64,000 nt of DNA from Macrostomum lignano (Eukaryota), in contig NIVC01000399.1 of the NCBI GenBank assembly GCA_002269645.1, forward strand, positions 124,001-188,000, given 5' to 3'. Shown piece by piece: positions 40,197 through 53,734 of the stretch. Position 1 is the first letter of the stretch, and the number at the start of each line of letters is the position of its first letter. The notes beneath the pieces were generated by a model. The model was given only the letters and a program-made list of their open reading frames with translations. It was not told where the DNA came from and did no database searches. A program made the position numbers and the translations under genes.

Positions 40197-41110
40197 TCAG
40201 TCCCACCCCGGCACTTCCAATCGGCACTTTCGCACCGCAGACGACCGCGGATTTCTGAACCCGAACCAGCCGCAGTTCAAGCCTCGGCCGCCTTGATTGG
40301 CAGATTCAATCAGACTGATTAGAGAGACCACTGCCTCCCCAGTGGCCTGACCGGTCCGGTTGGACTGCCTGCCGTCCAGCACCCGTCCCAGACGGGCCCA
40401 GCTGCCGCCGCCATCCCGACACCACGCCAGCAGTTCGCCTCCAACTCTCGGCAGTCCGGCTTCGATCGGTCTGATCCGGATTCGAACTCCGGACGTTGAC
40501 AGACTCGGCCGAAGCATCAACGCGTGGTGCGACGTGAATCTTGGCGACCCGGCCGGCAGCCGAGCTCGAACCAGCCGGTCCAAGACCGACAGCAGCCGCC
40601 GGTCGCGAACCAGATGATCCAGGCCGTCTCCCAGCGGCGCCGGCGCAGCAACCGAGTCGGGGAACCCGGCCGGAAACGACCAAGCGGACTGGGACTCGAG
40701 CTCCGCCTCGGCCAGGGCCAGTTCCCGCAGGCCGCCGACCTGAATGGGGCAGCGGGACACCAGAGAGAACCACACACGGCGAGCGGAGGACGCCGCAGAG
40801 CCTTGCCGCGGTGTCACGATGTCCCAGCTCGCCGACTGAGGACAGCGGCCTCGGCGGAGCAGGGTAAGCTGGAGCAGCTGACCTTCAGAGGCTTCAACCG
40901 CTGCTATTGACGTTGAAGAAGTCAGCGGCACGCCGAGAGCGTCGCTGACGGCGGAGGTCGCTGGCAGAGTCGGGATGTCGCGAGGTACGCGGCACTGCTG
41001 CTGATCTGGCAAGGTGGACACCAGCAGCTGCACACTGTGCAGAGTGTCGCTTGACTGACTTCGACGGTTCAACCAGCGATTCCAGTGGGACTGGGCTTCG
41101 GCTGAGAGGC
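40197..41110 (-). CDS. POP1: POP1 terminal coding exon, POPLD and C-terminal domains
   Basis: Acceptor cacaccccAG|GC. Contains SWDIVTP..VWFSLV..VGGLRELALAEAE..FPAGFPDS (POPLD motif) and GRVLDGRQSNRTGQATG..GFRNPRSSAVR. TGA at 40197; 914 nt. The upstream part of the 608-aa ORF in the track is translated minisatellite. Confidence 0.9.
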
Positions 41111-41189
41111 CTGGGGTGTGATCAGATATGGGAGTTGAGTTCTTGGGGATAGAAGTGTGTGATGATGGGATAATTATGTAAAATACTAG

Positions 41190-42207
41190 GGGACAAATGT
41201 GTGGGATATTTGAGGATAAATTTGTGGGATATTTGGGGATAAATTTGTGGGATATTTTGGGATAAATGTGTGGGGGATTAGGGATAAATGTTTGGGATAT
41301 TTGTGGATAAATTTGTGGGATATTTGGGGATAAACATGTGGGATATTTGGGGATAAACATGTGGGATATTTGGGGATAAACATGTGGGATATTTGGGGAT
41401 AAACATGTGGGATATTTGGGGATAAACATGTGGGATATTTGTGGATGAATTTGTGGGATATTTGGGGATAAACATGTGGGATATTTGGGGATAAACATGT
41501 GGGATATTTGGGGATAAACATGTGGGATATTTGGGGATAAACATGTGGGATATTTGGGGATAAACATGTGGGATATTTGTGGATGAATTTGTGGGATATT
41601 TGGGGATAAACATGTGGGATATTTGGGGATAAATGTGTGGGATATTTGTGGATAAATTTGTGGGATATTTGGGGATAAACATGTGGGATATTTGGGGATA
41701 AATTTGTGGGATTTTTGGGGATAAAAGTGTAAGATATTTGGGGATAAAAGTGTAAGATATTTGGGGATAAATGTGTGGGATATTTGGGGACAAATGTGTG
41801 GGATATTTGGGGATAAATGTGCGGGATATTTGGGGATAAATGTGCGGGATATTTGGGGACAAATGTGTGGGATATTTGGGGATAAATGTGTGGGATATTT
41901 GGGGATAAATGTGTGGGATATTTGGGGATAAACATGTGGGGATATTTGGGGATAAATGTGTGGGATATTTGGGGACAAATGTGTGGGATATTTGGGATAA
42001 ATTTGCGGGATATTTGGGGACAAATGTGTGGGATATTTGGGATAAATTTGTAGGATATTTGGGCATAAATCTGTGGGGGATTAAGGATAAATATGTGGGA
42101 TATTTGGGGACAAATGTGTGGGATATTTGGGGATAAAAGTGTGGGATATTTGTGGATAAAAGTTTGGGATATTTGGGGATAAAAGTGTGGGCTATTTGGG
42201 GATAAAA
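41190..42207. repeat. 23-bp minisatellite filling POP1 intron 2
   Basis: ggggataaacatgtgggatattt. Confidence 0.98.
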
Positions 42208-42244
42208 CTAGACTAATAAATGAACAATTATCTAGGACACCAAC

Positions 42245-42744
42245 CGTCGGGCGGTTGCGTTAAGAACTTGTCCATGATATCCTCAACGGCCGGTCCAAAC
42301 AGTCGATAACAACAAAACTGGTCTCGTTGCCAATCAACTGCCACCCGATTGGCGCTGCTCTCAGATTCCCCATCAGATCTCACAGCCGTCTCCAATTCAA
42401 CAGTCAACTGAGAGCTGAATAATGGATGACACCACAGCCAGCAGGTACCGGTGGCCAGACCGTCCAGCCGCACCGGTCCCAAGCAGTTCAAGGGATAGCT
42501 GTCCACTCGGTGTACAGTCAGGTTCATCGAGAATTGACGATCAGATAGCAGGCGGCTGCGGAGTCTGGCAGCTTCATCAGGGTCTAATAGGCGAGCCAGG
42601 ATATTGGCCAGGCTGGATGCGGGGCCTGAGAGCAGGCAGGGGTGCAGGTAGGAGGCGTCGTGAAGCAGAGCGCCACGGGCGGCTGCGCGAAGACACGGTC
42701 GGAGAACTTTGTCGGTGGGCCGCTCGGCGAGGCGGTAGCCCCAT
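42245..42744 (-). CDS. POP1: POP1 coding exon 2
   Basis: Acceptor cgcctatcgcAG|A. Reads KWGYRLAERPTDKVLRPCLRAAARGALLHDASYLHPCLLSGP..CWLWCHP (POP1 WGY..PT.K..R and HD.SY motifs). Donor G|GTTGGT; 500 nt. Confidence 0.9.
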
Positions 42745-42786
42745 CTGCGATAGGCGTGCGATTCAGGTTTTAGCTGGTTATTGAGG

Positions 42787-43095
42787 GCGTTTCTGCCGGG
42801 TTGTCAGGGGCGATTCTGCCGGGTTATCAGGGGCGATTCTGCCGGGTTGTCAGGGGCGATTCTGCCGGGTTGTCAGGGGCGATTCTGCCGGGTTGTCAGG
42901 GGCGATTCTTATGGATTATCAGGGGCGATTCTCATGGGTTATCAGGGGCGATTCTCATAGGTTGTCAGGGGCGATTCTCCCGGGTTATCAGGGGCGATTC
43001 TTATGGATTATTAGGTGCGATTCTCAAGGCTGATCAGGGGCGATTCTCATAGGTTGTCAGGGGCGATTCTCCCGGGTTATCAGGGGCGGTTCCCA
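42787..43095. repeat. 23-bp minisatellite filling POP1 intron 1
   Basis: caggggcgattctgccgggttgt variants. Confidence 0.96.
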
Positions 43096-43171
43096 TGGAT
43101 TGTTAGATGCGTTGTTAAGCAACAATTTCACAGTTTCCATACGCAATTAGTTCAGCCAAGAATGCACTCAC

Positions 43172-43590
43172 TTGGTCACCATATGAAACCGCTTGGCGTG
43201 CCACAGGTGCGTGGCCAGCCAATCAGGCCGCTCTTTCCCCAGCCTAGTCCGGTTCCGCCTTCGGAACAGTCGCTTCAAGCGTTTCTTCTGCTGCCGGCGC
43301 AGCTTCTGCTTGGCCATCAGCGCCTGGGCCTCGTTGAACGTCGAGCGCCGGAGTCGCAACGGCAACCGACGCGGATTATGACTGGCCGCCCGTCGTCGCA
43401 TTCGCCGGGGAAGCCGCTGCAGTCCGTGGACGAAGCCGCTGGACACCAGGCCCAGCTGAGACTCCAGGTGCTGCAGCTCGGCGGCTCTGGCAGCGGCGAA
43501 GTCCAGGACTCGAATCCCCTCCTGCTGAGGGTTTTCGATTTCGTCAGCTGATGCAGCGGCCGCTCCTTGGCGTCGTTGAGGTGATGAATC
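43172..43590 (-). CDS. POP1: POP1 (RNase P/MRP protein subunit), first identifiable coding exon, POP1 N-terminal domain
   Basis: Acceptor atcgcttgctctattccAG|GAT. Reads IRVLDFAAARAAEL..LQRLPRRMRRRAASHNPRRLP..WLATHLWHAKRFHM, the POP1 signature motifs. Donor AA|GTGAGT; 419 nt. No ATG precedes the conserved block. Confidence 0.93.
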
Positions 43591-43611
43591 CTGGAATAGA
43601 GCAAGCGATGA

Positions 43612-44200
43612 GGAAATCCGTGGGGAATCCCTGCTATGAAATACATTGGGAAAATCCAAGGAGAATCCCTGCTATTAAGTAAATTGGGGAAATCCCTGGA
43701 GAACCCTTGCTATGATGGACATAAGGGAAAATCGTGGGGAATCCCTGCTATGATGTACATTAGGGAAATCCGTGGAGAATCCCTGCTATGATTTACAATA
43801 CATTGAGGAAATCCGTGGGGAATCCCTGCTATGAAGTACATTGGGAAAATCCAAGGAGAATCCCTGCTATTAAGTAAATTGGGGAGATCCCAGGGGAACC
43901 CTTGCTATGATGGACATAAGGGAAAATCGTGGGAATCCCTGCTATGATGTACATTAGGGAAATCCGTGGAGAATCCCTGCTATGATTTACAATACATTGA
44001 GGAAATCCGTGGGAAATCCCTGCTATGAAGTACATTTGGGAAATCCATGGGGAATCCCTGCTATGAAGTACATTCGGGAAATCCATGGGGAATCCCTGCT
44101 ATCAAGTAAATTAGGGAAATCCGTAGGAAATCGGTGCAATGAAGTACATTAGGGAAATCCGTGGGAAATCCCTGCTATGATGTACATTGGATAGTCCGTG
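43612..44200. repeat. ~37-bp minisatellite immediately upstream of the POP1 acceptor
   Basis: gggaaatccgtggggaatccctgctatgaagtacatt, with a larger duplicated block. Confidence 0.95.
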
Positions 44201-44994
44201 CTTTGATGTATATTAGGAAAATCTATGGGGAATTCCATAAAAGTTCAATATTTGCCAGAGGGTTGACGGCACACAGATGCAATGCCAGCGGAACAGCAGC
44301 CTAGCCTGACTTTCTAAAAAAAATCCAAGCACAAAATTTTCCGCTGAGAACAGCGCGAGTGCATGGCATCAAAGCGTGAACCGATATATTTGAGTATAAT
44401 ATAAAATAAAATATATAATATAATCTTTCTACATAACTATATGCAACAAAGAAATAAAGCGAGTAATTTCAAAAGAAAACTTTTAACTCTTTTTAATTCG
44501 CAGTTTCGTCAATTCAGTGCAAGAAAAAAGAGAGGTTTTAAGATCTAAAACAGGAATAGATAGATAGATAAAACTTGCACACAAAATCATATAATCACAT
44601 TAATACACGGCAGCGAGTGTAAGAAGTTCAGATCTAATAATTTAATATCACAGAAAGAACATCTTAGAAAAATTGGACGGATTAATTCTATCACAAGAGG
44701 AAAAAACTGTGTTGAAAAAATTCGCTTGTTCAACAAGGCACGGTGGTTTGTGTAAATTTTCTTTTTTTTAGCAAAAAACGCTAATTTTGCTACTCATCTA
44801 AGTAGAGAAAAAGAGAAAAGTGCGGCGGAAAATAAATAATATAAACATCGTACTTCTTTTTTAAGAAATTTAAAGCACAAAATAACTAAGTTAACGAAAA
44901 ATCAAATTTAAACAAAAGAACAATTAAAAATGTGCTCCGTTATCTAGTAATAAGTAGAGTATATTAAAATTTGTTTCGAGTTTTACAGCGAAAA

Positions 44995-45193
44995 TTATCG
45001 CTTGTTGCTGCCAGGCCGAATCAAGCGATGCGCTGGGGCCGATTTACTGCGAAGCATCTTCTGCTGCTGGGCGGCGCTGGCGGTTGAAGAAGAGGGCCCC
45101 GCGGCCTGGCCGACAGAGGTGGGCGGCCGAGCACGAGCTTTGGCGGTGGCGGCTCGACTGGGGAGGATCGGGTGGCCGCCGTTCACCTCCATG
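44995..45193 (-). CDS. ANKAR: ANKAR terminal coding exon
   Basis: Acceptor ccacccgcAG|C (phase 2) gives [26 protein letters not shown], then TAA. Resembles the recalled vertebrate LEKNGGPSIIP segment. An AT-rich putative 3'UTR follows. Confidence 0.82.
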
Positions 45194-45235
45194 CTGCGGG
45201 TGGCGGGCCGGGCGAGGCTGGGATGCTGGGACACT

Positions 45236-45409
<174 letters not shown>

Positions 45410-45413
45410 TCAC

Positions 45414-45805
45414 AACTGGCAGGGCAGGCCGATTTTCTCGGCAGCCCGGAAGTCGGCCAGGAACTCATCGCAGATGCGGGCATCGGGCAGCGGCAGCGCG
45501 GCCTCCAGCTTGTAGAACAGGCCGGGATTCTCGCGACAGGCTTTGAGCAGCAGGCGGGCGGCGGTCCTGTTGAAGGTCAAGTAGCCCAGCACCACGGAGG
45601 CAGCCGAGCGGACTGTCCGGCTGTCCGAGTCCAGCAGCAGGCGGACCAGACGGTCGAGGCCGCCGGCCGTGATGATGGCGTCCTTCAGGCCGGAGCGCGA
45701 GTGCGCCAGGGAGGCCAGGTAGGCGCAGGCGGTTTCCACCAGCTCTTCGGCGGCGGCGGCGCTCTGCTGCTGCGACACTGGCAGTGCCGAGGACGAGCGC
45801 GGAGT
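45414..45805 (-). CDS. ANKAR: ANKAR coding exon, final armadillo repeats
   Basis: Acceptor gctcaaacAG|A. Reads [78 protein letters not shown]. Donor TT|GTGAGT; 392 nt. Confidence 0.92.
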
Positions 45806-45942
45806 CTGTTTGAGCAGGGTTGGGGGCGAGGGATGCTTCGATTTTAAACCTTTCTGAGAAGTTCCAGTCTCTCTGTGAATACGCTTCATCAAGCATATCT
45901 AAATACATGGTAAATTCATGCCTATATGAAAGTCTGCAGAAA

Positions 45943-46815
45943 TCCCATTTAGAGAGATCCCATTTACAGAAATCTCAATTAGAAAAATCCCATTTAGAGA
46001 AATCCCATTTAGAGAAATTCCATTTAGAAAGATCCTATTTAGAGACACCCCATTTAGAGAGATCCCATTTAGAGAGATCCCATTCAGAGAGATCCCATTC
46101 AGAGAAATCCCATTTAGAGACACCCCATTTAGAGAGATCCCATTCAGAGAGATCCCATTCAGAGAAATCCTATTTAGAGAGATCCCATTTAGATAGACTC
46201 CACTTAGAGAGACCCCATTTAGAGAAATCCCATTTAGAGAGATCCCATTTACAGAAATCTCATTTAGAGAAATCCCATTTAGAGAAATCCCATTTAGAGA
46301 AATCCCATTTAGAAAGATCCTATTTAGAGACACCCCATTTAGAGAGATCCAATTCAGAGAGATCCCATTCAGAGAGATCCCATTCAGAGAAATCTCATTT
46401 AGAGAGATCCCATTCAGAGAAATCCCATTTAGAGACACCCCATTTAGAGAGATCCAATTCAGAGAGATCCCATTTAGAGAGATCCAATTCAGAGAGATCC
46501 CATTCAGAGAGATCCCATTCAGAGAAATCCCATTTAGAGACACCCCATTTAGAGAGATCCCATTCAGAGAGATCCCATTCAGAGAAATCCTATTTAGAGA
46601 GATCCCATTTAGAGAGACCCCACTTAGAGAGACCCCACTTAGAGAGATCCCATTTAGAGAAATCCCATTTAGAGAGATCCCATTTACAGAAATCTCAATT
46701 AGAAAAATCCCATTTAGAGAAATCCCATTTAGAGAAATCCCATTTAGAGAAATCCCATTTAGAGAGATCCCATTTACAGAAATCTCAATTAGAAAAATCC
46801 CATTTAGAGAAATTC
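45943..46815. repeat. 15-bp minisatellite in ANKAR intron
   Basis: cccatttagaga(a/g)at; source of the HLERS and GISLN ORFs. Confidence 0.98.
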
Positions 46816-46863
46816 CACACATAGAAAGAATAAGTCCTAATTCTTCAAAGTCCTCAAGCCCAC

Positions 46864-47075
46864 CTTCAGCAGTCCGACCAGAATTTGAATGCCCTTGGCG
46901 GTCAAGGACACCGGATCGGCGTACACAATGTCCCTGGTGAGCACAACGGATTGGAAAGCGGCGTGACACCTGGCGGCGGGATCTGAGCTGGCCAGGAACT
47001 CCTCCAGAGCTGCAATGCTGATTCCGCCAGCTTCACGGATGGCAAACTGTTGCCGGGTGTTGTTGAAAGCGAACA
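46864..47075 (-). CDS. ANKAR: ANKAR coding exon
   Basis: Acceptor ccaccctgcAG|TG. Reads VFAFNNTRQQFAIREAGGISIAALEEFLASSDPAARCHAAFQSVVLTRDIVYADPVSLTAKGIQILVGLLK. Donor AAG|GTGGGC; 212 nt. Confidence 0.92.
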
Positions 47076-47194
47076 CTGCAGGGTGGGGTGGTTTCGTTGA
47101 AAATGCTGACACATTCTTGCACGCTACTTACAGTAGCTAGTAGGCTAATCGAATTTATTAATTAACTTTAAGGCATCGTAAAACTGACAATGGC

Positions 47195-47438
47195 CAGTGA
47201 CATTTAAAGTGACATTTGACAGTCAGTGACATTTGGCTGTCAGTGACATTTGACTGTCAGTGACATTTGACTGTCAGTGACATTTGACTGTCAGTGACAT
47301 TTGACTGTCAGTGACAATTGACTGTCAGTGACATTTGACTGTCAGTGACATTTGACTGTCAGTGACATTTGACTGTCAGTGACATTTGACTGTCAGTGAC
47401 ATTTGACTGTCAGTGACATTTGACTGTCAGTGACATTT
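47195..47438. repeat. 17-bp palindromic minisatellite in ANKAR intron
   Basis: cagtgacatttgactgt; TGTCA-G-TGACA and TGAC-T-GTCA. Confidence 0.97.
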
Positions 47439-47582
47439 GAATTTGAGCGACATTTAACCGTCATGATTACATGTAGATTAAATATGGGGATTTAAAGATT
47501 TGTTAGGAAATATTTGTATCATATTTATTCCAGCAAAAAATTGCAACTACACTACTGAAAGCAGTAGTCACACTAGTTTTAC

Positions 47583-48008
47583 CAGCCAAAGCTTGACATC
47601 CTCGCAGACGAATTTTCGGCGTCTCGGCATCCAAAAGTGCCAGCAGAAGAGAATAGGAGAACTGCGGCAGCTGCTTCAGTTGCAGCTGGTTGTCGCCATT
47701 GCGCAGCACAAGGCAGCCCAGGCTGTAGGCGGCTTCAGCTTGCACCTCAGGCACTGGCGAATTAGCTAACAGTTCAGTTAGCAACTCGATTGCACCTTCC
47801 TCGGCTAGGCGGCTCTGCGTTGCCGGATTGTTGCTATGGGCAACGCCGACGCACAGGGCGGCCAAGCATTGCACGGCGTATAGAAGAACCCGTTGACTGG
47901 ATTTGGGCGATTTCATGATGCGAACCAGAGGCTGCAGACCGCCCTCCTTAGCCACTTCGTTCTGCCTGGTGACGCTGTCTCGGGCCAGGGCTGTCAGGGC
48001 CACGCACG
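47583..48008 (-). CDS. ANKAR: ANKAR coding exon, armadillo repeats
   Basis: Acceptor ccccgaactcAG|CG. Reads ACVALTALARDSVTRQNEVAKEGGLQPLVRIM..LCVGVAHSNNPATQ..AEAAYSLGCLVLRN..IRLRGCQALA. Donor G|GTAAAA; 426 nt. Confidence 0.92.
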
Positions 48009-48631
48009 CTGAGTTCGGGGAGACACACGAGATTTCTATGTACTTTTAATCTAGCGTCTACTTAAAAAGTGCAAGTGTGTACTTTAGAAGTGCAAGTGTA
48101 CTTTAAAAGTGCAAGTGTACTTTAAAAGTGCAAGTGTGTACTTTAAAAGTGCAAGTGTATTTTAAAAGTACACATAGACACACAGAAAGTACAATTGAAC
48201 TTTAACTGATAGATGAAAATGTACTTTAGCATGCCTTATCAAAGTTGAATTTAAGTACACGTAAACTTTAAAAAAAGTACAATTGTGTACAGGCAAATAG
48301 CTACAAATACTTATTGTACTAAAGAAGCTTATTAAAAACATTCCCGTTAAAACGTTACCCTGACAAGAATCGCTAAAAGAGTAATTACAAACAACTCAAC
48401 TCAAACAAGTGACTGTAGCAACTCTTTAGTGAACTGCAGAATCGTAAAAAGTCGCGAAGAAGTCATCTAAGAGTCGGTGTGTTAGCGCTTAACTTTCTAC
48501 TAACTCAAGTAGACTGAATAGAGTGTTATAAATGCGAAATGCGATTCTAATTCATTCTTCGATTCTTGCGATTCTTGCGATTCTAATGCGATCCCATATT
48601 TAAATTTGAATTTAGAAATCACAGATCTTAC

Positions 48632-48785
48632 CAACAAACTGCAACTTCTCAGACTTGGTCATGAGTATCTCTATGAGCTGCTGGATGCCAATTCTCTCAG
48701 CTATGGCCCTCTGCTGTACATGCGTGGCACCTGCCAGAGCCCACAGTGCCAGGGCGCCCTGCTCTTTCACCTCCAGCGACCAAAC
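48632..48785 (-). CDS. ANKAR: ANKAR coding exon, armadillo repeat
   Basis: Acceptor tactccgcAG|G. Reads VWSLEVKEQGALALWALAGATHVQQRAIAERIGIQQLIEILMTKSEKLQFV. Donor G|GTAAGA; 154 nt. Confidence 0.93.
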
Positions 48786-49059
48786 CTGCGGAGTACAGCA
48801 GAGAAATATTTTGAATGCCTCAACAGGAGCTACATAAGTATTGAAGCGACATGGATAGTCAGTAAAGCTACTATTGCACTTACTGAATGTATGCACGATA
48901 CAAAAGGCTGCTATGGCCTAAAATATTTCATTTCATTTATTCACTCACTCATTCATAATGACTCTCAAATGTACTTTGTTGATCATTCTCTCATCCACGC
49001 ACTTTATCATCTCACTGTCTATATCATTGTCTTACTCCCAATCTCATTGTCTACTCCTG

Positions 49060-50088
49060 ATCTCATCATCTCACTCCTAATCTCATAATCTCACTCCTAA
49101 TCTCATAATCTCGCTCCTAATCTCATAATCTCACTCCTAATCTTATCAGCTCACTCCTAATCTTATCAGCTCACTCCTAATCTTATCAGCTCACTCCTAA
49201 TCTTATCAGCTCACTCCTAATCTTATCAGCTCGCTCCTAATCTCATCATCTCACTCCTAATCTCATCATCTCGCTCCTAATCTCATCATCTCACTCCTAA
49301 TCTTATCAGCTCACTCCTAATCTTATCAGCTCACTCCTAATCTTATCAGCTCACTCCTAATCTTATCAGCTCACTCCTAATCTTATCAGCTCACTCCTAA
49401 TCTTATCAGCTCACTCCTAATCTTATCAGCTCACTCCTAATCTCATAATCTCACTCCTAATCTTTTCAGCTCACTCCTAATCTTATCAGCTCACTCCTAA
49501 TCTTATCAGCTCGCTCCTAATCTCATCATCTCACTCCTAATCTCATCATCTCGCTCCTAATCTCATCATCTCACTCCTAATCTTATCAGCTCACTCCTAA
49601 TCTTATCAGCTCACTCCTAATCTTATCAGCTCACTCCTAATCTTATCAGCTCACTCCTAATCTTATCAGCTCACTCCTAATCTTATCAGCTCACTCCTAA
49701 TCTTATCAGCTCACTCCTAATCTCATAATCTCACTCCTAATCTTTTCAGCTCACTCCTAATCTTATCAGCTCACTCCTAATCTCATCATCTCACTCCCAA
49801 TCTCATTGTCTACTTCTAATATCACCATCTCACTCGCTATCTCATCATCTCACTCGCTATCTCATCATCTCACTCGCTATCTCATCATCTCACTCGCTAT
49901 CTCACCATCTCACTCGCTATCTCATCATCTCACTCGCTATCTCATCATCTCACTCGCTATCTCATCATCTCACTCGCTATCTCATCATCTCACTCGCTAT
50001 CTCACCATCTCACTCGCTATCTCATCATCTCACTCGCTATCTCATCATCTCACTCGCTATCTCATCATCTCACTCGCTATCTCATCAT
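49060..50088. repeat. Two adjacent related 20-bp minisatellites in ANKAR intron
   Basis: tcactcctaatcttatcagc (49060-49800), then ctcactcgctatctcatcat (49826-50088). Confidence 0.97.
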
Positions 50089-50594
50089 TCCACTCCAAGT
50101 AGAGCAAAAGTAGCAAAAATGATACTTCCTGATAAACTGACATAAACTACTAAAAGTAACATTAACACTAAGTAGGTCGGCATTTTATTACACGAAACTG
50201 ATAACAAGAGCAAAAAAACCTGTTTTCTCCAGAGCAGCCGAGCTTTGTTCATAAATTAGCAAGCGAAAGCGAATTTAAACGTACTAGACCTGCGACTAAA
50301 CTAATTTTTATACTCCGATTGAACTAAGCTAAGTATATGTGCACATTGTCCATAATACCAGGAATTGTCTAACACAGACAACTATAAATATTGAACAGAA
50401 AAATTCTGCTTTAAATTTGATGTTCGCACATGGATTCCGAAACAAACTTACGCTGACTTCATGAATGAGTGACGGAAACATCTATAAAAATTCATTTCGG
50501 AAAAAAGCTCAAAATATTAGCAAGACTAATGCGTTCTGTAAATAAATTGTGACAGAAAGTGTGTGTCATTATGAAAATAAGATTTTGATCCCAA

Positions 50595-52110
50595 TGATAC
50601 ACCACAGACAAAATCTCTCTACCCCGATGTACACCACAGACAAAATCTCTGCCCCAATGTACACACCAGACAGAATCTCTCTGCCCCAATGATACACCAC
50701 AGACAAAATCTCTTTGCCCCAATGTACACCACAGACAAAATCTCTCTGCCCCAATGTACACACCAGACAGAATCTCTCGGCCCCAATGTACACACCATAG
50801 ACAAAATCTCTTTGCCCCAATGTACACCACAGACAAAATCTCTCTGCCCCAATGTACACACCAGACAAAATCTCTTTGCCCCAATGTACACCACAGACAA
50901 AATCTCTCTGCCCCAATGATACACCATAGACAAAATCTCTTTGCCCCAATGTACACCACAGACAAAATCTCTCTGCCCAATGTACACACCAGACAGAATC
51001 TCTCTGCCCCAATGATACACCACAGACAAAATCTCTCTGCCCCAATGTACACCACAGACAGAATCTCTCGGCCCCAATGTACACACCAGACAGAATCTCT
51101 TTGCCCCAATGTACACCACAGACAAAATCTCTCTGCCCCAATGTACACACCAGACAGAATCTCTCGGCCCCAATGTACACACCATAGACAAAATCTCTCT
51201 GCCCCAATGTACACACCAGACAGAATCTCTCTGCCCCAATGATACACCACAGACAAAATCTCTTTGCCCCAATGTACACCACAGACAAAATCTCTCTGCC
51301 CAATGTACACACCAGACAGAATCTCTCTGCCCCAATGATACACCACAGACAAAATCTCTCTGCCCCAATGTACACCACAGACAGAATCTCTCGGCCCCAA
51401 TGTACACACCAGACAGAATCTCTTTGCCCCAATGTACACCACAGACAAAATCTCTCTGCCCCAATGTACACACCAGACAGAATCTCTCGGCCCCAATGTA
51501 CACACCATAGACAAAATCTCTCTGCCCCAATGTACACACCAGACAGAATCTCTCTGCCCCAATGATACACCACAGACAAAATCTCTTTGCCCCAATGTAC
51601 ACCACAGACAAAATCTCTCTGCCCCAATGTACACACCAGACAGAATCTCTCGGCCCCAATGTACACACCATAGACAAAATCTCTTTGCCCCAATGTACAC
51701 CACAGACAAAATCTCTCTGCCCCAATGTACACACCAGACAGAATCTCTCGGCCCCAATGTACACACCATAGACAAAATCTCTCTGCCCCAATGATACACC
51801 ATAGACAAAATCTCTTTGCCCCAATGTACACCACAGACAAAATCTCTCTGCCCAATGTACACACCAGACAGAATCTCTCTGCCCCAATGATACACCACAG
51901 ACAAAATCTCTCTGCCCCAATGTACACCACAGACAAAAACTCTCTGCCCCAATGTACACACCACAGACAAAATCTCTCTGCCCCAATGTACACACCACAG
52001 ACAAAATCTCTCTGCCCGACTGCACTCACCACAGACTAATTCTCTCTACCCCTATGTACAACAAGACTAAATCTCTCTACCCCAATGTACACAATGTACA
52101 CCACAGACTA
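50595..52110. repeat. 32-35-bp minisatellite with higher-order repeats in ANKAR intron
   Basis: gccccaatgtacac(a)ccagacaaaatctctct variants. Confidence 0.98.
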
Positions 52111-53074
52111 AATCTATTTACCATTAACATACACAAGGGGATTAAAATTTGCCTGGAAATATATTAATTGATCCTAGCACTTTAATTTATCTTGCGCCTA
52201 ACGCTTAAACGAAACAGGAAAGTACCAAAATCTGTTTATGCTAATGAACAAATTAATGAAAAATTCATAATAAAAATTTTGTTTTACTATAGATACAATT
52301 ACCTAAAAAAGATGCACTTCAATAATATTTTTTGGTTATCGCAAAACATGCTATGCAATGTCGTATAATTTAAAAATGGACCAAATTCATGCACTTCAAG
52401 CGGTGTAACATGCTTGCTGGGAGTAAAAGCATATCAAAATAGGAATTATAGCACCTTAATGAAAATGGATTCAATAAACGACCAACTGCATAATCCAATT
52501 ATATAAAAATACAAATTTATTAGATAACTTAACAATAAAAACGTGCATTAAAAAAATCATGCAAAATTTAATTAATAAAAAAGTTTTGTGTCAATAATTT
52601 GGAAACCAATTATAAAATACTTACACCAAAATCGACTCCCTGAAATTAGCGAAACATTCATTTTTAATTCGCTAAATAATACAATAACTCCCATGCTATA
52701 TACAACAGTAAATTGCCTGTGTTGCTCGCCGCGGTTACTACTGAGTAGTATAGAGTGCGTGTGGAGTTCAGAAAAACAACATTTGGTGCAACAATTAGTG
52801 CAATATTTCAATATTCATGGGTGCGAATAGCCAAAGTATAGCCAAGGCTGTCAAGGAAACAAAAACAATTGGTAGAGATGCTAGGACGAGGTAGTTGTCA
52901 AGGGTGCAAAATGGTTGCTAAGGACGCCGGTTGTTATTTAAATTATGTTTTATAGGGAGCCTAGCCATCTAGAAAACTATAATAATGGAAAAATATTTAT
53001 GGCTATTAGAAACCATTAAAATATGGAATACTAAAATCTACATATGATGGTTGCCAAGGACGCCACAAATAAGT

Positions 53075-53445
53075 CACCTGGGAGACCATTAGAATAGATG
53101 GTTACCAAGAGTCAAGGACGCCACAGTCACTAGGGATACCATTTGAATGGTTGGTTACCAAGGACGGCACAAATAGTCACTAGGGATACCATTTGAATAG
53201 TTGCCAAGGACGCCATAAAATTGTCACTAGGGAAACCATTAGAATGGATGGTTGCCAAGGACGCCACAAATAAGTCACTAGGGAAACCATTAGAATGAAT
53301 GGTTTCCAAGGACGCCACAAATAAGTCACTAGGGAAACCATTAGAATGAATGGTTTCCAAGGACGCCACAAATAAGTCACTAGGGAAACCATTAGAATGA
53401 ATGGTTTCCAAGGACGCCACAAATAAGTCACTAGGGAAACCATTA
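53075..53445. repeat. 51-bp hairpin minisatellite in ANKAR intron
   Basis: ggacgccacaaataagtcactagggaaaccattagaatgaatggtttccaa; GGAAACCATT-N6-AATGGTTTCC. Confidence 0.95.
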
Positions 53446-53583
53446 GAATACATGTACATGTTTGCCAACCAAGGACGCTAGAAATGGCATCAAATGAAGC
53501 CGCTGTTGTTACGGACGCTAATTATGGTTGCTAAGATGCAGAATAATAATTGGTGACAGAATCAAAGCCCAAGGCATTCTCAC

Positions 53584-53734
53584 CTTGAGCAATTTAAGCA
53601 GGGCTTTATCAGTTTCCAATCGAATGAAAGCCTTCTGCGACATCGGGTTGCCTTCGGACAGGGCCTCAACAGCACTGGCGGCTTTCACTTGCACATTGAT
53701 ATTGCCGCGGCTTTTCAGCAGATTGACCAACGGT
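53584..53734 (-). CDS. ANKAR: ANKAR coding exon, armadillo repeat
   Basis: Acceptor attcactcAG|A. Reads PLVNLLKSRGNINVQVKAASAVEALSEGNPMSQKAFIRLETDKALLKLLK. Donor AAG|GTGAGA; 151 nt. Confidence 0.92.

What the first reader, a model, noticed from the sequence alone, without database searches (positions are those of the whole stretch)
43172..43680. POP1 has no genomic start codon; a spliced-leader AUG would supply it exactly in frame
Seen: the POP1 frame is closed by an in-frame TAG at 43674-43672. There is no in-frame ATG before the conserved FAAARAAEL block; the first is inside PRRMRRR and would truncate the POP1 domain. A good acceptor (ttgctctattccAG|GAT TCA TCA) lies in phase 0 at 43590, and I found no convincing ATG-bearing cis exon between it and the ANKAR stop. 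Established: flatworm spliced leaders end in a conserved AUG that can act as initiator Met. Inference: trans-splicing here yields M-DSSPQRRQG.., so an essential housekeeping protein would depend on the SL RNA for its first codon.
Basis: partly seen in the sequence, partly recalled or inferred. Interest (0 to 1): 0.85.

Follow-up and report, generated by a model that had tools for sequence, protein, structure and literature searches.

The report
Flatworm POP1 borrows spliced-leader start codon
The POP1 gene of the flatworm Macrostomum lignano has no start codon of its own, and almost certainly takes it from the AUG at the end of the spliced leader added to its mRNA; this is a real example of a mechanism already known in flatworms.

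Summary
On the minus strand, the POP1 frame is closed by TAA TAG at 43677-43672. It has no in-frame ATG until codon 64 (43401-43399), which lies inside the conserved PRRMRRR block. A good acceptor (ctattccAG|GAT) sits in phase 0 at 43590.

The window is Macrostomum lignano, identical to NIVC01000399.1 of assembly Mlig_3_7. This species' 35-nt spliced leader (SL) ends in ATG. All three near-identical copies of the locus in the assembly share the acceptor, the upstream stop and the missing ATG, so this is not an assembly error.

The GenBank annotation set mRNA 5' ends from mapped SL-containing reads. In all three copies it gives a 610-aa 'partial' protein that begins DSSPQ, the first codon after the acceptor. 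This is strong but indirect evidence that SL trans-splicing yields M-DSSPQRRQG.

I could not see any reads. One weak in-frame cis alternative remains: an ATG mini-exon in the tandem repeat with donor att|GTAAAT.

The mechanism is established: Cheng et al. 2006 reported more than 40 Schistosoma cDNAs that need the SL AUG. It has also been noted for Macrostomum. This is therefore a new member of a known kind, of modest interest.

The parts
43591..43612 (-). 3' splice (trans-splice) acceptor: the unique pyrimidine-rich tract ctcatcgcttgctctattcc followed by AG (43592-43591)
   Evidence: It is identical in all three assembly copies. It fits the M. lignano trans-acceptor motif [T/C]TNCAG.
43172..43590 (-). 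POP1 exon 1. It starts GAT TCA TCA (DSS...) with no ATG, and ends with the donor CAA|GTGAGT.
   Evidence: The GenBank CDS of PAA83870.1 starts at this base.
43672..43677 (-). In-frame TAA TAG that closes the POP1 frame 81 nt upstream of the acceptor
   Evidence: The same TAG is present in all three copies.
43474..43500 (-). Conserved FAAARAAEL motif of the POP1 N-terminal domain (codons 31-39 after the acceptor)
   Evidence: It aligns with human POP1 FAQARAAEI and with yeast Pop1. Pfam POP1_N matches at 7.6e-29.
43399..43401 (-). First genomic in-frame ATG (codon 64, inside PRRMRRR). It is a conserved internal Met, not a start.
   Evidence: It aligns with the Met of human PRHMRRR.
42245..42744 (-). 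POP1 exon 2 (donor ACG|GTTGGT)
   Evidence: The spliced product equals PAA83870.1.
40197..41110 (-). POP1 exon 3 with the stop TGA at 40199-40197
   Evidence: The gene span of 3394 nt equals that of L005.
43609..44190 (.). Tandem repeat array (38-bp unit, 195-bp higher-order unit) that fills the presumed outron just upstream of the acceptor. Its units carry acceptor-like catagcag|GG sites and several ATGs.
   Evidence: One 195-bp unit is absent in the other two copies.
43797..43841 (-). Rival cis mini-exon ATG..CAATGTATT, followed by the weak donor GTAAAT (43796). It is duplicated at 44035-43991. Spliced to 43590 it reads MYFIAGIPHGFPQCI-DSSPQ.
   Evidence: The same donor-acceptor pair is used in the old fused model UniProt A0A1I8FP40.
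44191..44994 (-). Unique, mostly AT-rich spacer: the presumed 3'UTR of the upstream gene plus the start of the POP1 outron. It has no AATAAA on this strand; ATTAAA lies 349 and 498 nt after the upstream stop.
44995..44997 (-). Stop codon TAA of the upstream same-strand ankyrin/armadillo-repeat (ANKAR-like) gene, 1404 nt before the POP1 acceptor
   Evidence: The annotated 1445-aa product has Ank and Arm Pfam hits.

Best explanation
This is the 5' end of the Macrostomum lignano POP1 gene, which encodes a protein subunit of RNase P/MRP.

The pre-mRNA is either transcribed from its own promoter in the roughly 1.4-kb spacer or read through from the upstream ANKAR-like gene. In either case it is SL trans-spliced at the AG at 43592-43591. 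The 35-nt spliced leader ends in AUG, and joining it to GAUUCAUCA... makes that AUG the first codon of the POP1 reading frame (M-DSSPQRRQG...).

The genome encodes no usable start codon. Upstream the frame is closed by TAA TAG. Downstream, the first AUG (codon 64) would remove the conserved FAxARAxE motif. Every functional POP1 molecule therefore depends on trans-splicing for its initiator Met.

Shown here: the sequence anatomy, the organism, the SL sequence (from the literature), the reading frame, and the annotated 5'-partial CDS at the acceptor in three copies. Inferred: that SL-joined reads underlie that annotation boundary, and that ribosomes initiate at the SL AUG.
For: 1.
2. The window matches NIVC01000399.1 of GCA_002269645.1 (M. 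lignano) with 0 mismatches over 13,394 nt.
3. The three copies (L004, L005, L006) all have the identical acceptor, an in-frame TAG 81 nt upstream, no in-frame ATG, and the first ATG at codon 64.
4. GenBank proteins PAA83870.1, PAA64465.1 and PAA76012.1 are all 610 aa, flagged 'partial', and begin DSSPQRRQG. In all three loci the CDS starts at the first base after the annotated position 10000, which is the G of the AG.
5. That annotation cut transcripts at peaks of trimmed SL-containing reads (the TBONE pipeline) and then ran TransDecoder (PMC5730564). A 5'-partial ORF starting exactly after the AG, although the frame stays open for 81 nt upstream, implies that the mRNA model starts at the acceptor.
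6. The M. lignano SL ends in ATG, and the trans-acceptor motif [T/C]TNCAG fits ttccag (PMC8629364).
7. In SL plus exon 1, the only ATGs in the first 300 nt are the SL ATG (nt 33) and Met64 (nt 225).
8. The region before Met64 is homologous to human and yeast POP1 and to Pfam POP1_N.
9. Orthologues place their Met 20-26 residues before the motif (Schistosoma, arthropods), compared with 31 here.
10. There is precedent: SL AUG use in S. mansoni, and the note that the Macrostomum SL ATG is a likely start codon.
Against: No SL-to-POP1 junction read or cDNA could be inspected with the tools available. The annotation boundary is indirect evidence, and I saw only CDS coordinates, not the mRNA feature.

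A cis-spliced ATG mini-exon in the tandem repeat is in frame and intact in all three copies. Its donor GTAAAT scores -0.42 on my generic consensus matrix. The donor actually used by POP1 exon 2 scores -0.94.

An older gene model (UniProt A0A1I8FP40) joins this same acceptor in cis to that donor and to the upstream gene.

Initiation at the SL AUG has not been shown for this species in anything I read.
Confidence: 0.85

Rival explanations
1. A cis-spliced alternative first exon inside the tandem repeat supplies the start codon. ATG at 43841 (or 44035) runs to the donor att|GTAAAT at 43796 (or 43990) and is spliced to the 43590 acceptor, giving MYFIAGIPHGFPQCI-DSSPQ...
For: It is the only in-frame ATG/donor/acceptor combination found in 43600-45010. 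It is confirmed in frame and is intact in all three copies. The same donor-acceptor junction appears in the older gene model A0A1I8FP40. Weak donors are used in this very gene: the exon 2 donor GTTGGT scores -0.94.
Against: The donor does not fit the species' GT[G/A]AG motif. The peptide is encoded by a minisatellite and has no homology to POP1 N-termini. The RNA-seq-guided Mlig_3_7 annotation has no such exon in any of the three copies; if it did, TransDecoder would have called a complete CDS rather than a 5'-partial one. The copies are 98-99% identical, so the fact that the exon is intact carries no weight. No protein with this N-terminus is in the 15-billion-protein collection.
Confidence: 0.06
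2. POP1 is translated from a read-through ANKAR-POP1 transcript as a fusion ORF. A cryptic donor in the last ANKAR exon (ttcgca|GTAAAT, 45047) is joined to the mini-exon 43825-43797 and then to the 43590 acceptor.
For: In the accurate sequence this path is in frame (...QQQKMLR-RIPHGFPQCI-DSSPQ...). It is the splice pattern of UniProt A0A1I8FP40. M. lignano is known to produce multi-gene precursor transcripts.
Against: A0A1I8FP40 comes from an error-prone older assembly and is full of frame switches. Gene predictors typically fuse a gene that lacks an ATG to its neighbour. The net frame match has a one-in-three chance. Both donors are weak. Mlig_3_7 annotates two separate genes, with the ANKAR CDS ending at its TAA. 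A 2,000-aa ciliary-type/RNase P fusion protein has no precedent among the POP1 homologues seen.
Confidence: 0.03
3. No start codon is donated. Translation starts either at the internal Met64, giving an N-terminally truncated POP1, or at a near-cognate codon on RNA that has not been trans-spliced.
For: Met64 is the first genomic in-frame ATG, and no other ATG in any frame lies between the acceptor and it.
Against: Residues 23-63 are homologous to human and yeast POP1 and are kept open in frame. Met64 aligns with an internal Met of human POP1. RNA that is not trans-spliced carries many upstream ATGs from the repeat array, including a long overlapping out-of-frame ORF that starts at 43646.
Confidence: 0.04
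4. The missing ATG is an assembly error, or this copy is a pseudogene.
For: None beyond the absence of an ATG.
Against: Three separate contigs agree. Models from the independent older assembly also lack a Met (P0164 and P0165 start LFQDSSPQ). The 610-codon frame is intact across three exons in all copies.
Confidence: 0.01

Closest known systems
[quoted passage not shown]
   Same: A flatworm SL ending in AUG is trans-spliced in frame onto an ORF that has no genomic start codon upstream of its conserved region. More than 40 such cDNAs were reported, and 28% of trans-spliced transcripts have the SL AUG in frame.
   Different: The species is a free-living macrostomid and the gene is POP1. SL AUG use is inferred from sequence and annotation here, and has not been shown by cDNA, reporter or translation assays. 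The Schistosoma POP1 orthologue is annotated with a Met at its start, so the dependence seems specific to this lineage.
SL trans-spliced genes and operons of Macrostomum lignano (Wudarski et al. 2017, PMC5730564; Ustyantsev & Berezikov 2021, PMC8629364)
   Same: Same organism and same SL. The acceptor fits [T/C]TNCAG. POP1 is a conserved gene, and conserved genes are enriched among trans-spliced genes. The repeat-adjusted spacer of 822 nt to the same-strand upstream gene is below the 1-kb operon threshold.
   Different: Those studies did not examine which genes need the SL ATG. This gene appears in the annotation only as an unexplained 'partial' CDS. Membership of an operon was not verified here.
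slORFs: ORFs created by start or near-cognate codons within spliced leaders (slORFfinder, PMC9851317)
   Same: The ORF begins inside the SL and exists only after trans-splicing.
   Different: In this case the slORF is the canonical, conserved protein itself. It is not a new or alternative ORF.
POP1, the RNase P/MRP protein subunit (human 6AHR chain B, yeast 6AGB chain B)
   Same: It has the POP1_N domain and matches human POP1 at E = 1e-35 over residues 23-261, including the FAxARAxE and RRRAxSHN motifs.
   Different: It is shorter (611 aa, compared with 1024 in human and 875 in yeast). The Pfam POPLD and POP1_C domains were not detected at E <= 0.01. The start codon is not genome-encoded.

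Membership tests
Flatworm mRNA whose initiator AUG is donated by the spliced leader | The organism has an SL RNA whose leader ends in AUG | tested here: met
   The window is identical to M. lignano contig NIVC01000399.1, and the protein names confirm the species. The SL is CGGTCTCTTACTGCGAAGACTCAATTTATTGCATG (PMC8629364). The SL gene itself is not in the window.
Flatworm mRNA whose initiator AUG is donated by the spliced leader | A 3' splice acceptor at the mRNA 5' end, with no strong cis donor upstream | tested here: met
   The acceptor ttccAG has a pyrimidine fraction of 0.76. No donor scores 3 or more in the 1.4 kb upstream; the best is GTAAAT at -0.42.
Flatworm mRNA whose initiator AUG is donated by the spliced leader | SL-containing transcripts are joined at that acceptor | tested here: inconclusive
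   The evidence is indirect only. The 5'-partial GenBank CDS starts exactly at the acceptor in three copies, and the annotation pipeline set 5' ends from SL reads. No reads were accessible. No transcript-derived protein of this species is in the protein collection.
Flatworm mRNA whose initiator AUG is donated by the spliced leader | The SL AUG is in frame with the conserved ORF, and there is no genomic in-frame AUG before the conserved domain | tested here: met
   with homology of residues 23-63 shown.
Flatworm mRNA whose initiator AUG is donated by the spliced leader | Translation actually initiates at the SL AUG | not testable with these tools
   This needs ribosome profiling, N-terminal proteomics or a reporter assay.
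POP1 (RNase P/MRP subunit) | POP1 N-terminal domain (PF06978) | tested here: met
   E = 7.6e-29; human POP1 at 1e-35 and yeast Pop1 at 5e-15.
POP1 (RNase P/MRP subunit) | POPLD / POP1_C C-terminal domains | tested here: inconclusive
   They were not reported by Pfam at E <= 0.01 on the 610-aa product. The C-terminal half is divergent, and no profile-profile or structure test was run.
SL-resolved operon (downstream cistron) | A same-strand upstream gene within 1 kb (repeat-adjusted), with the downstream gene SL trans-spliced | tested here: inconclusive
   The distance from the ANKAR stop to the acceptor is 1404 nt. Subtracting the 582-nt tandem array gives 822 nt, against the 1-kb threshold. 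Trans-splicing is inferred, and the poly(A) site of the upstream gene is unknown.
SL-resolved operon (downstream cistron) | A polycistronic precursor transcript spanning both genes | not testable with these tools
   The only hint is the fused old gene model A0A1I8FP40.

The most novel reading that the evidence does not exclude
POP1 is the distal cistron of a two-gene ANKAR-POP1 operon. Because none of the three genomic copies encodes a start codon, synthesis of this essential RNase P/MRP subunit is strictly gated by SL trans-splicing. That would give M. lignano a built-in coupling between trans-splicing capacity and tRNA/rRNA processing.
Probability: 0.3. Interest if true: 0.4.

Novelty: new member of a known kind. 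Interest (0 to 1): 0.3.

Why it matters
It is a clean example in a free-living model flatworm of an essential housekeeping protein whose start codon exists only in the mature trans-spliced mRNA.

In practice, it explains why GenBank lists three 'partial' POP1 proteins and why an older annotation fused POP1 to its neighbour. It also shows that genome-only gene prediction in flatworms will systematically truncate or mis-join such genes unless the SL ATG is modelled.

Biologically it adds little, because the mechanism was established in Schistosoma in 2006.

Tried and rejected
- **Word-indexed homologue search with exons 1+2.** It returned only distant POP1s, at most 39% identical, and missed the identical GenBank proteins. 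The likely cause is that low-complexity R/A-rich words filled the 8000-candidate limit. The exhaustive HMMER search found them.
- **Search with an ANKAR exon to identify the organism.** It was uninformative.
- **Contigs of the three best distant hits.** These were genomic DNA from unrelated species and gave no information about the 5' end.
- **Rfam on the whole window and a search for the SL sequence.** No SL RNA gene is in the window, as expected.
- **Look-up of the Met-initiated protein on transcript contigs.** Exact look-ups of M+610 aa (three variants), the Met64-start form and the mini-exon form were all absent from the collection.
- **Last homologue search, not spent on the N-terminus.** The 90% cluster of this protein contains only NCBI and UniRef members. 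In other clusters, fragments derived from read assemblies do cluster with their full-length protein. So no transcript-derived M. lignano POP1 is likely to be in that collection.
- **Supplementary tables of three M. lignano papers.** None contained the gene ids. Wasik et al. 2015 is not held.
- **Bacterial promoter/terminator scan of the spacer.** It is irrelevant for a eukaryote.
- **Donor scores.** They use a generic metazoan consensus matrix of my own, not a model trained on M. lignano.

Full report
**Observation.** I read 42000-45500 on the minus strand and translated the three frames of 43172-43680. The POP1 frame reads T * * QGFSLDFPNVFHSRDSPRISSSLALFQ DSSPQRRQGAAAASADEIENPQQEGIRVLDFAAARAAELQ...LPRRMRRR... 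This places TAA at 43677-43675 and TAG at 43674-43672. The first in-frame ATG is at 43401-43399, which is codon 64 counted from 43590. The acceptor ctcatcgcttgctctattccAG|GATTCATCA has its AG at 43592-43591 and puts 43590 in phase 0. Among all AG sites between 43760 and 43500 it has the highest pyrimidine content. The exon ends at 43172 with CAA|GTGAGT.

**Gene model and why the N-terminus must be translated.** Three exons give a 610-codon frame without a Met: 43590-43172, 42744-42245, and 41110-40197 with its TGA. The product matches Pfam POP1_N at 7.6e-29 and human POP1 (6AHR chain B) at 1e-35 over residues 23-261. In that alignment, FAAARAAEL pairs with human FAQARAAEI, and the Met of PRRMRRR pairs with the internal Met of human PRHMRRR. 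Yeast Pop1 also aligns from residue 26. The first genomic ATG is therefore a conserved internal residue, and about 40 residues of conserved sequence lie upstream of it. Orthologues start 20-26 residues before the motif: three unnamed species from read assemblies, and Schistosoma mansoni and S. rodhaini, a beetle and a branchiopod. A Met placed at the acceptor lies 31 residues before the motif, which is consistent with those orthologues.

**Organism and copies.** The word-indexed protein search missed the organism. The exhaustive HMMER search returned a 610-aa protein that is 99% identical and aligns 1-610 to 1-610. The cluster look-up names it PAA64465.1, 'hypothetical protein BOX15_Mlig033392g1, partial [Macrostomum lignano]'. 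It has two sister entries, PAA83870.1 (Mlig015767g1) and PAA76012.1 (Mlig015158g1), both also 610 aa and 'partial'. All three begin DSSPQRRQG. Their contigs belong to GCA_002269645.1, the Mlig_3_7 assembly. The window is identical to NIVC01000399.1 with 0 mismatches in 13,394 nt. In each locus the called CDS starts at the first base after ...ctattccAG. All three copies share the acceptor, an in-frame TAG 81 nt upstream, no in-frame ATG, and the first ATG at codon 64. Two UniRef models from the older, independent assembly start LFQDSSPQ and also lack a Met. An assembly error is therefore excluded.

**What the annotation boundary means.** Wudarski et al. 2017 (PMC5730564) built the GenBank annotation in steps. 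They trimmed SL sequences from SL-containing RNA-seq reads and mapped the reads. Their TBONE pipeline then used the resulting peaks to cut transcriptional units into mature mRNAs with exact 5' ends. Finally they called ORFs with TransDecoder. From my own knowledge of TransDecoder, a 5'-partial ORF begins at the first in-frame codon of the transcript. The genomic frame here stays open for another 81 nt upstream, yet the CDS starts exactly after the AG in all three copies. The transcript models must therefore begin at the acceptor, which is what a TBONE cut at an SL peak produces. This is strong evidence, but it is indirect. I saw CDS coordinates only and no reads.

**The spliced leader.** The M. 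lignano SL is CGGTCTCTTACTGCGAAGACTCAATTTATTGCATG. The top motif at trans-splice acceptors is [T/C]TNCAG (PMC8629364), and ttccag fits it. Joining the SL to 43590 gives ...UUGCAUG|GAUUCA, which translates as MDSSPQRRQG. In the first 300 nt of that mRNA the only ATGs in any frame are the SL ATG (nt 33) and Met64 (nt 225). The base after the AUG is G, contributed by the exon. All reported parasitic-flatworm SLs end in AUG (PMC12582326). Cheng et al. 2006 found the SL AUG in frame in 28% of S. mansoni trans-spliced transcripts and required by more than 40 cDNAs (as summarised in PMC9851317). Wiberg et al. [quoted passage not shown]

**Upstream region and rivals.** The upstream same-strand gene is annotated as a 1445-aa product with ankyrin and armadillo repeats. 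Its TAA is at 44997-44995, so 1404 nt separate it from the acceptor. The spacer consists of an AT-rich unique part followed by a 582-nt tandem array (38-bp unit, 195-bp higher-order unit; 43609-44190). The array ends about 20 nt before the acceptor.

I enumerated every combination of ATG, GT donor and AG acceptor in 43600-45010 that would read into FAAARAAELQ. No donor in the region reaches a consensus score of 3. The best in-frame option uses ATG 43841 (or its repeat copy at 44035), the donor att|GTAAAT (score -0.42) and the 43590 acceptor, giving MYFIAGIPHGFPQCI-DSSPQ. It cannot be dismissed on donor strength alone, because the donor actually used by exon 2 (GTTGGT) scores -0.94. It is intact in all three copies, but those copies are 98-99% identical, so this carries no weight.

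The same donor-acceptor pair appears in UniProt A0A1I8FP40, a 778-aa model from the older assembly. That model fuses the ANKAR C-terminus to POP1 and switches frame repeatedly. In the accurate sequence, the path from the ANKAR donor at 45047 through the mini-exon 43825-43797 to 43590 is in frame. I regard this model mainly as a predictor's way of rescuing a gene that lacks an ATG. The RNA-seq-guided Mlig_3_7 annotation contains neither the mini-exon nor the fusion in any copy. No Met-initiated form (SL-Met, Met64 or mini-exon) exists in the 15-billion-protein collection.

RNA that is not trans-spliced would carry many upstream ATGs from the repeat array, including an out-of-frame ORF that starts at 43646 and runs across the acceptor.

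**Operon question.** Ustyantsev & Berezikov classify gene pairs as operonic when the repeat-adjusted distance is below 1 kb and the downstream gene is trans-spliced. Here the distance is 1404 - 582 = 822 nt from the stop codon, and less from the unknown poly(A) site. There is no AATAAA on the gene strand in the spacer in any copy. ATTAAA occurs 349 and 498 nt after the stop. POP1 may therefore be the distal gene of a two-gene operon. This is an inference only.

**Limits.** No tool gave access to reads or transcript contigs of this species. Supplementary gene tables did not contain the ids. The donor scores use a generic matrix.

**Verdict.** The mechanism is well established in flatworms and has been noted for this genus, and the gene already sits in GenBank as an unexplained 'partial' CDS. 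It is a new member of a known kind, and I score its interest at 0.3.

Noticed in passing
window 40197-53590 (= L005); L004 and L006: The whole ANKAR-POP1 locus occurs three times in the Mlig_3_7 assembly at about 98-99% identity. The proteins differ by a few residues, and the tandem arrays differ in length (one 195-bp unit is absent in two copies). This fits the known partial genome duplication of the DV1 line.
   Followed up: partly
window 45047, 43825-43797, 43590 (minus strand): A chain of weak splice sites would fuse the ANKAR-like ORF in frame to POP1 (...QQQKMLR-RIPHGFPQCI-DSSPQ...). UniProt A0A1I8FP40, from the older assembly, uses this chain with two compensating 1-nt differences and several other frame switches. 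It is probably a mis-fused gene model.
   Followed up: partly
window 41500-42206, 42785-43101, 43609-44190, 45243-45409, and many others across the window: Both POP1 introns, the spacer and the last ANKAR intron are filled with minisatellites (23-bp, 38/195-bp) or (GTCT)n microsatellite. Most long 'ORFs' in the window are translations of such arrays.
   Followed up: no
window 43630-43671 and each repeat unit up to 44190 (minus strand): Every repeat unit carries an acceptor-like catag|cag|GG. The copies at 43671 and 43668 are also in phase 0 with POP1, immediately after the TAG. SL addition at either would give an in-frame product 26-27 residues longer.
   Followed up: no
window 43591-44994 (minus strand): There is no AATAAA on the gene strand between the ANKAR stop and the POP1 acceptor in any of the three copies; only ATTAAA is present, at +349 and +498. 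The upstream gene's poly(A) site is therefore unclear.
   Followed up: partly
window 40197-41110 (POP1 exon 3): The C-terminal half of this POP1 gave no Pfam POPLD or POP1_C hit. The protein is only about 611 aa, compared with about 790 in Schistosoma and 1024 in human.
   Followed up: no
window 7903-8811 (minus strand): This is the first exon of a cadherin-repeat protein. It has its own ATG and a signal-peptide-like start (MTTPRMQSCSIFAFLCLSAVAVNFAAS), so not every gene here lacks a genomic start codon.
   Followed up: no
tool behaviour: The word-indexed protein search did not return the 100%-identical GenBank proteins, which the exhaustive search found at once. The likely cause is that arginine- and alanine-rich words saturated the candidate list. 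Negative results from that tool on low-complexity queries should not be trusted.
   Followed up: yes
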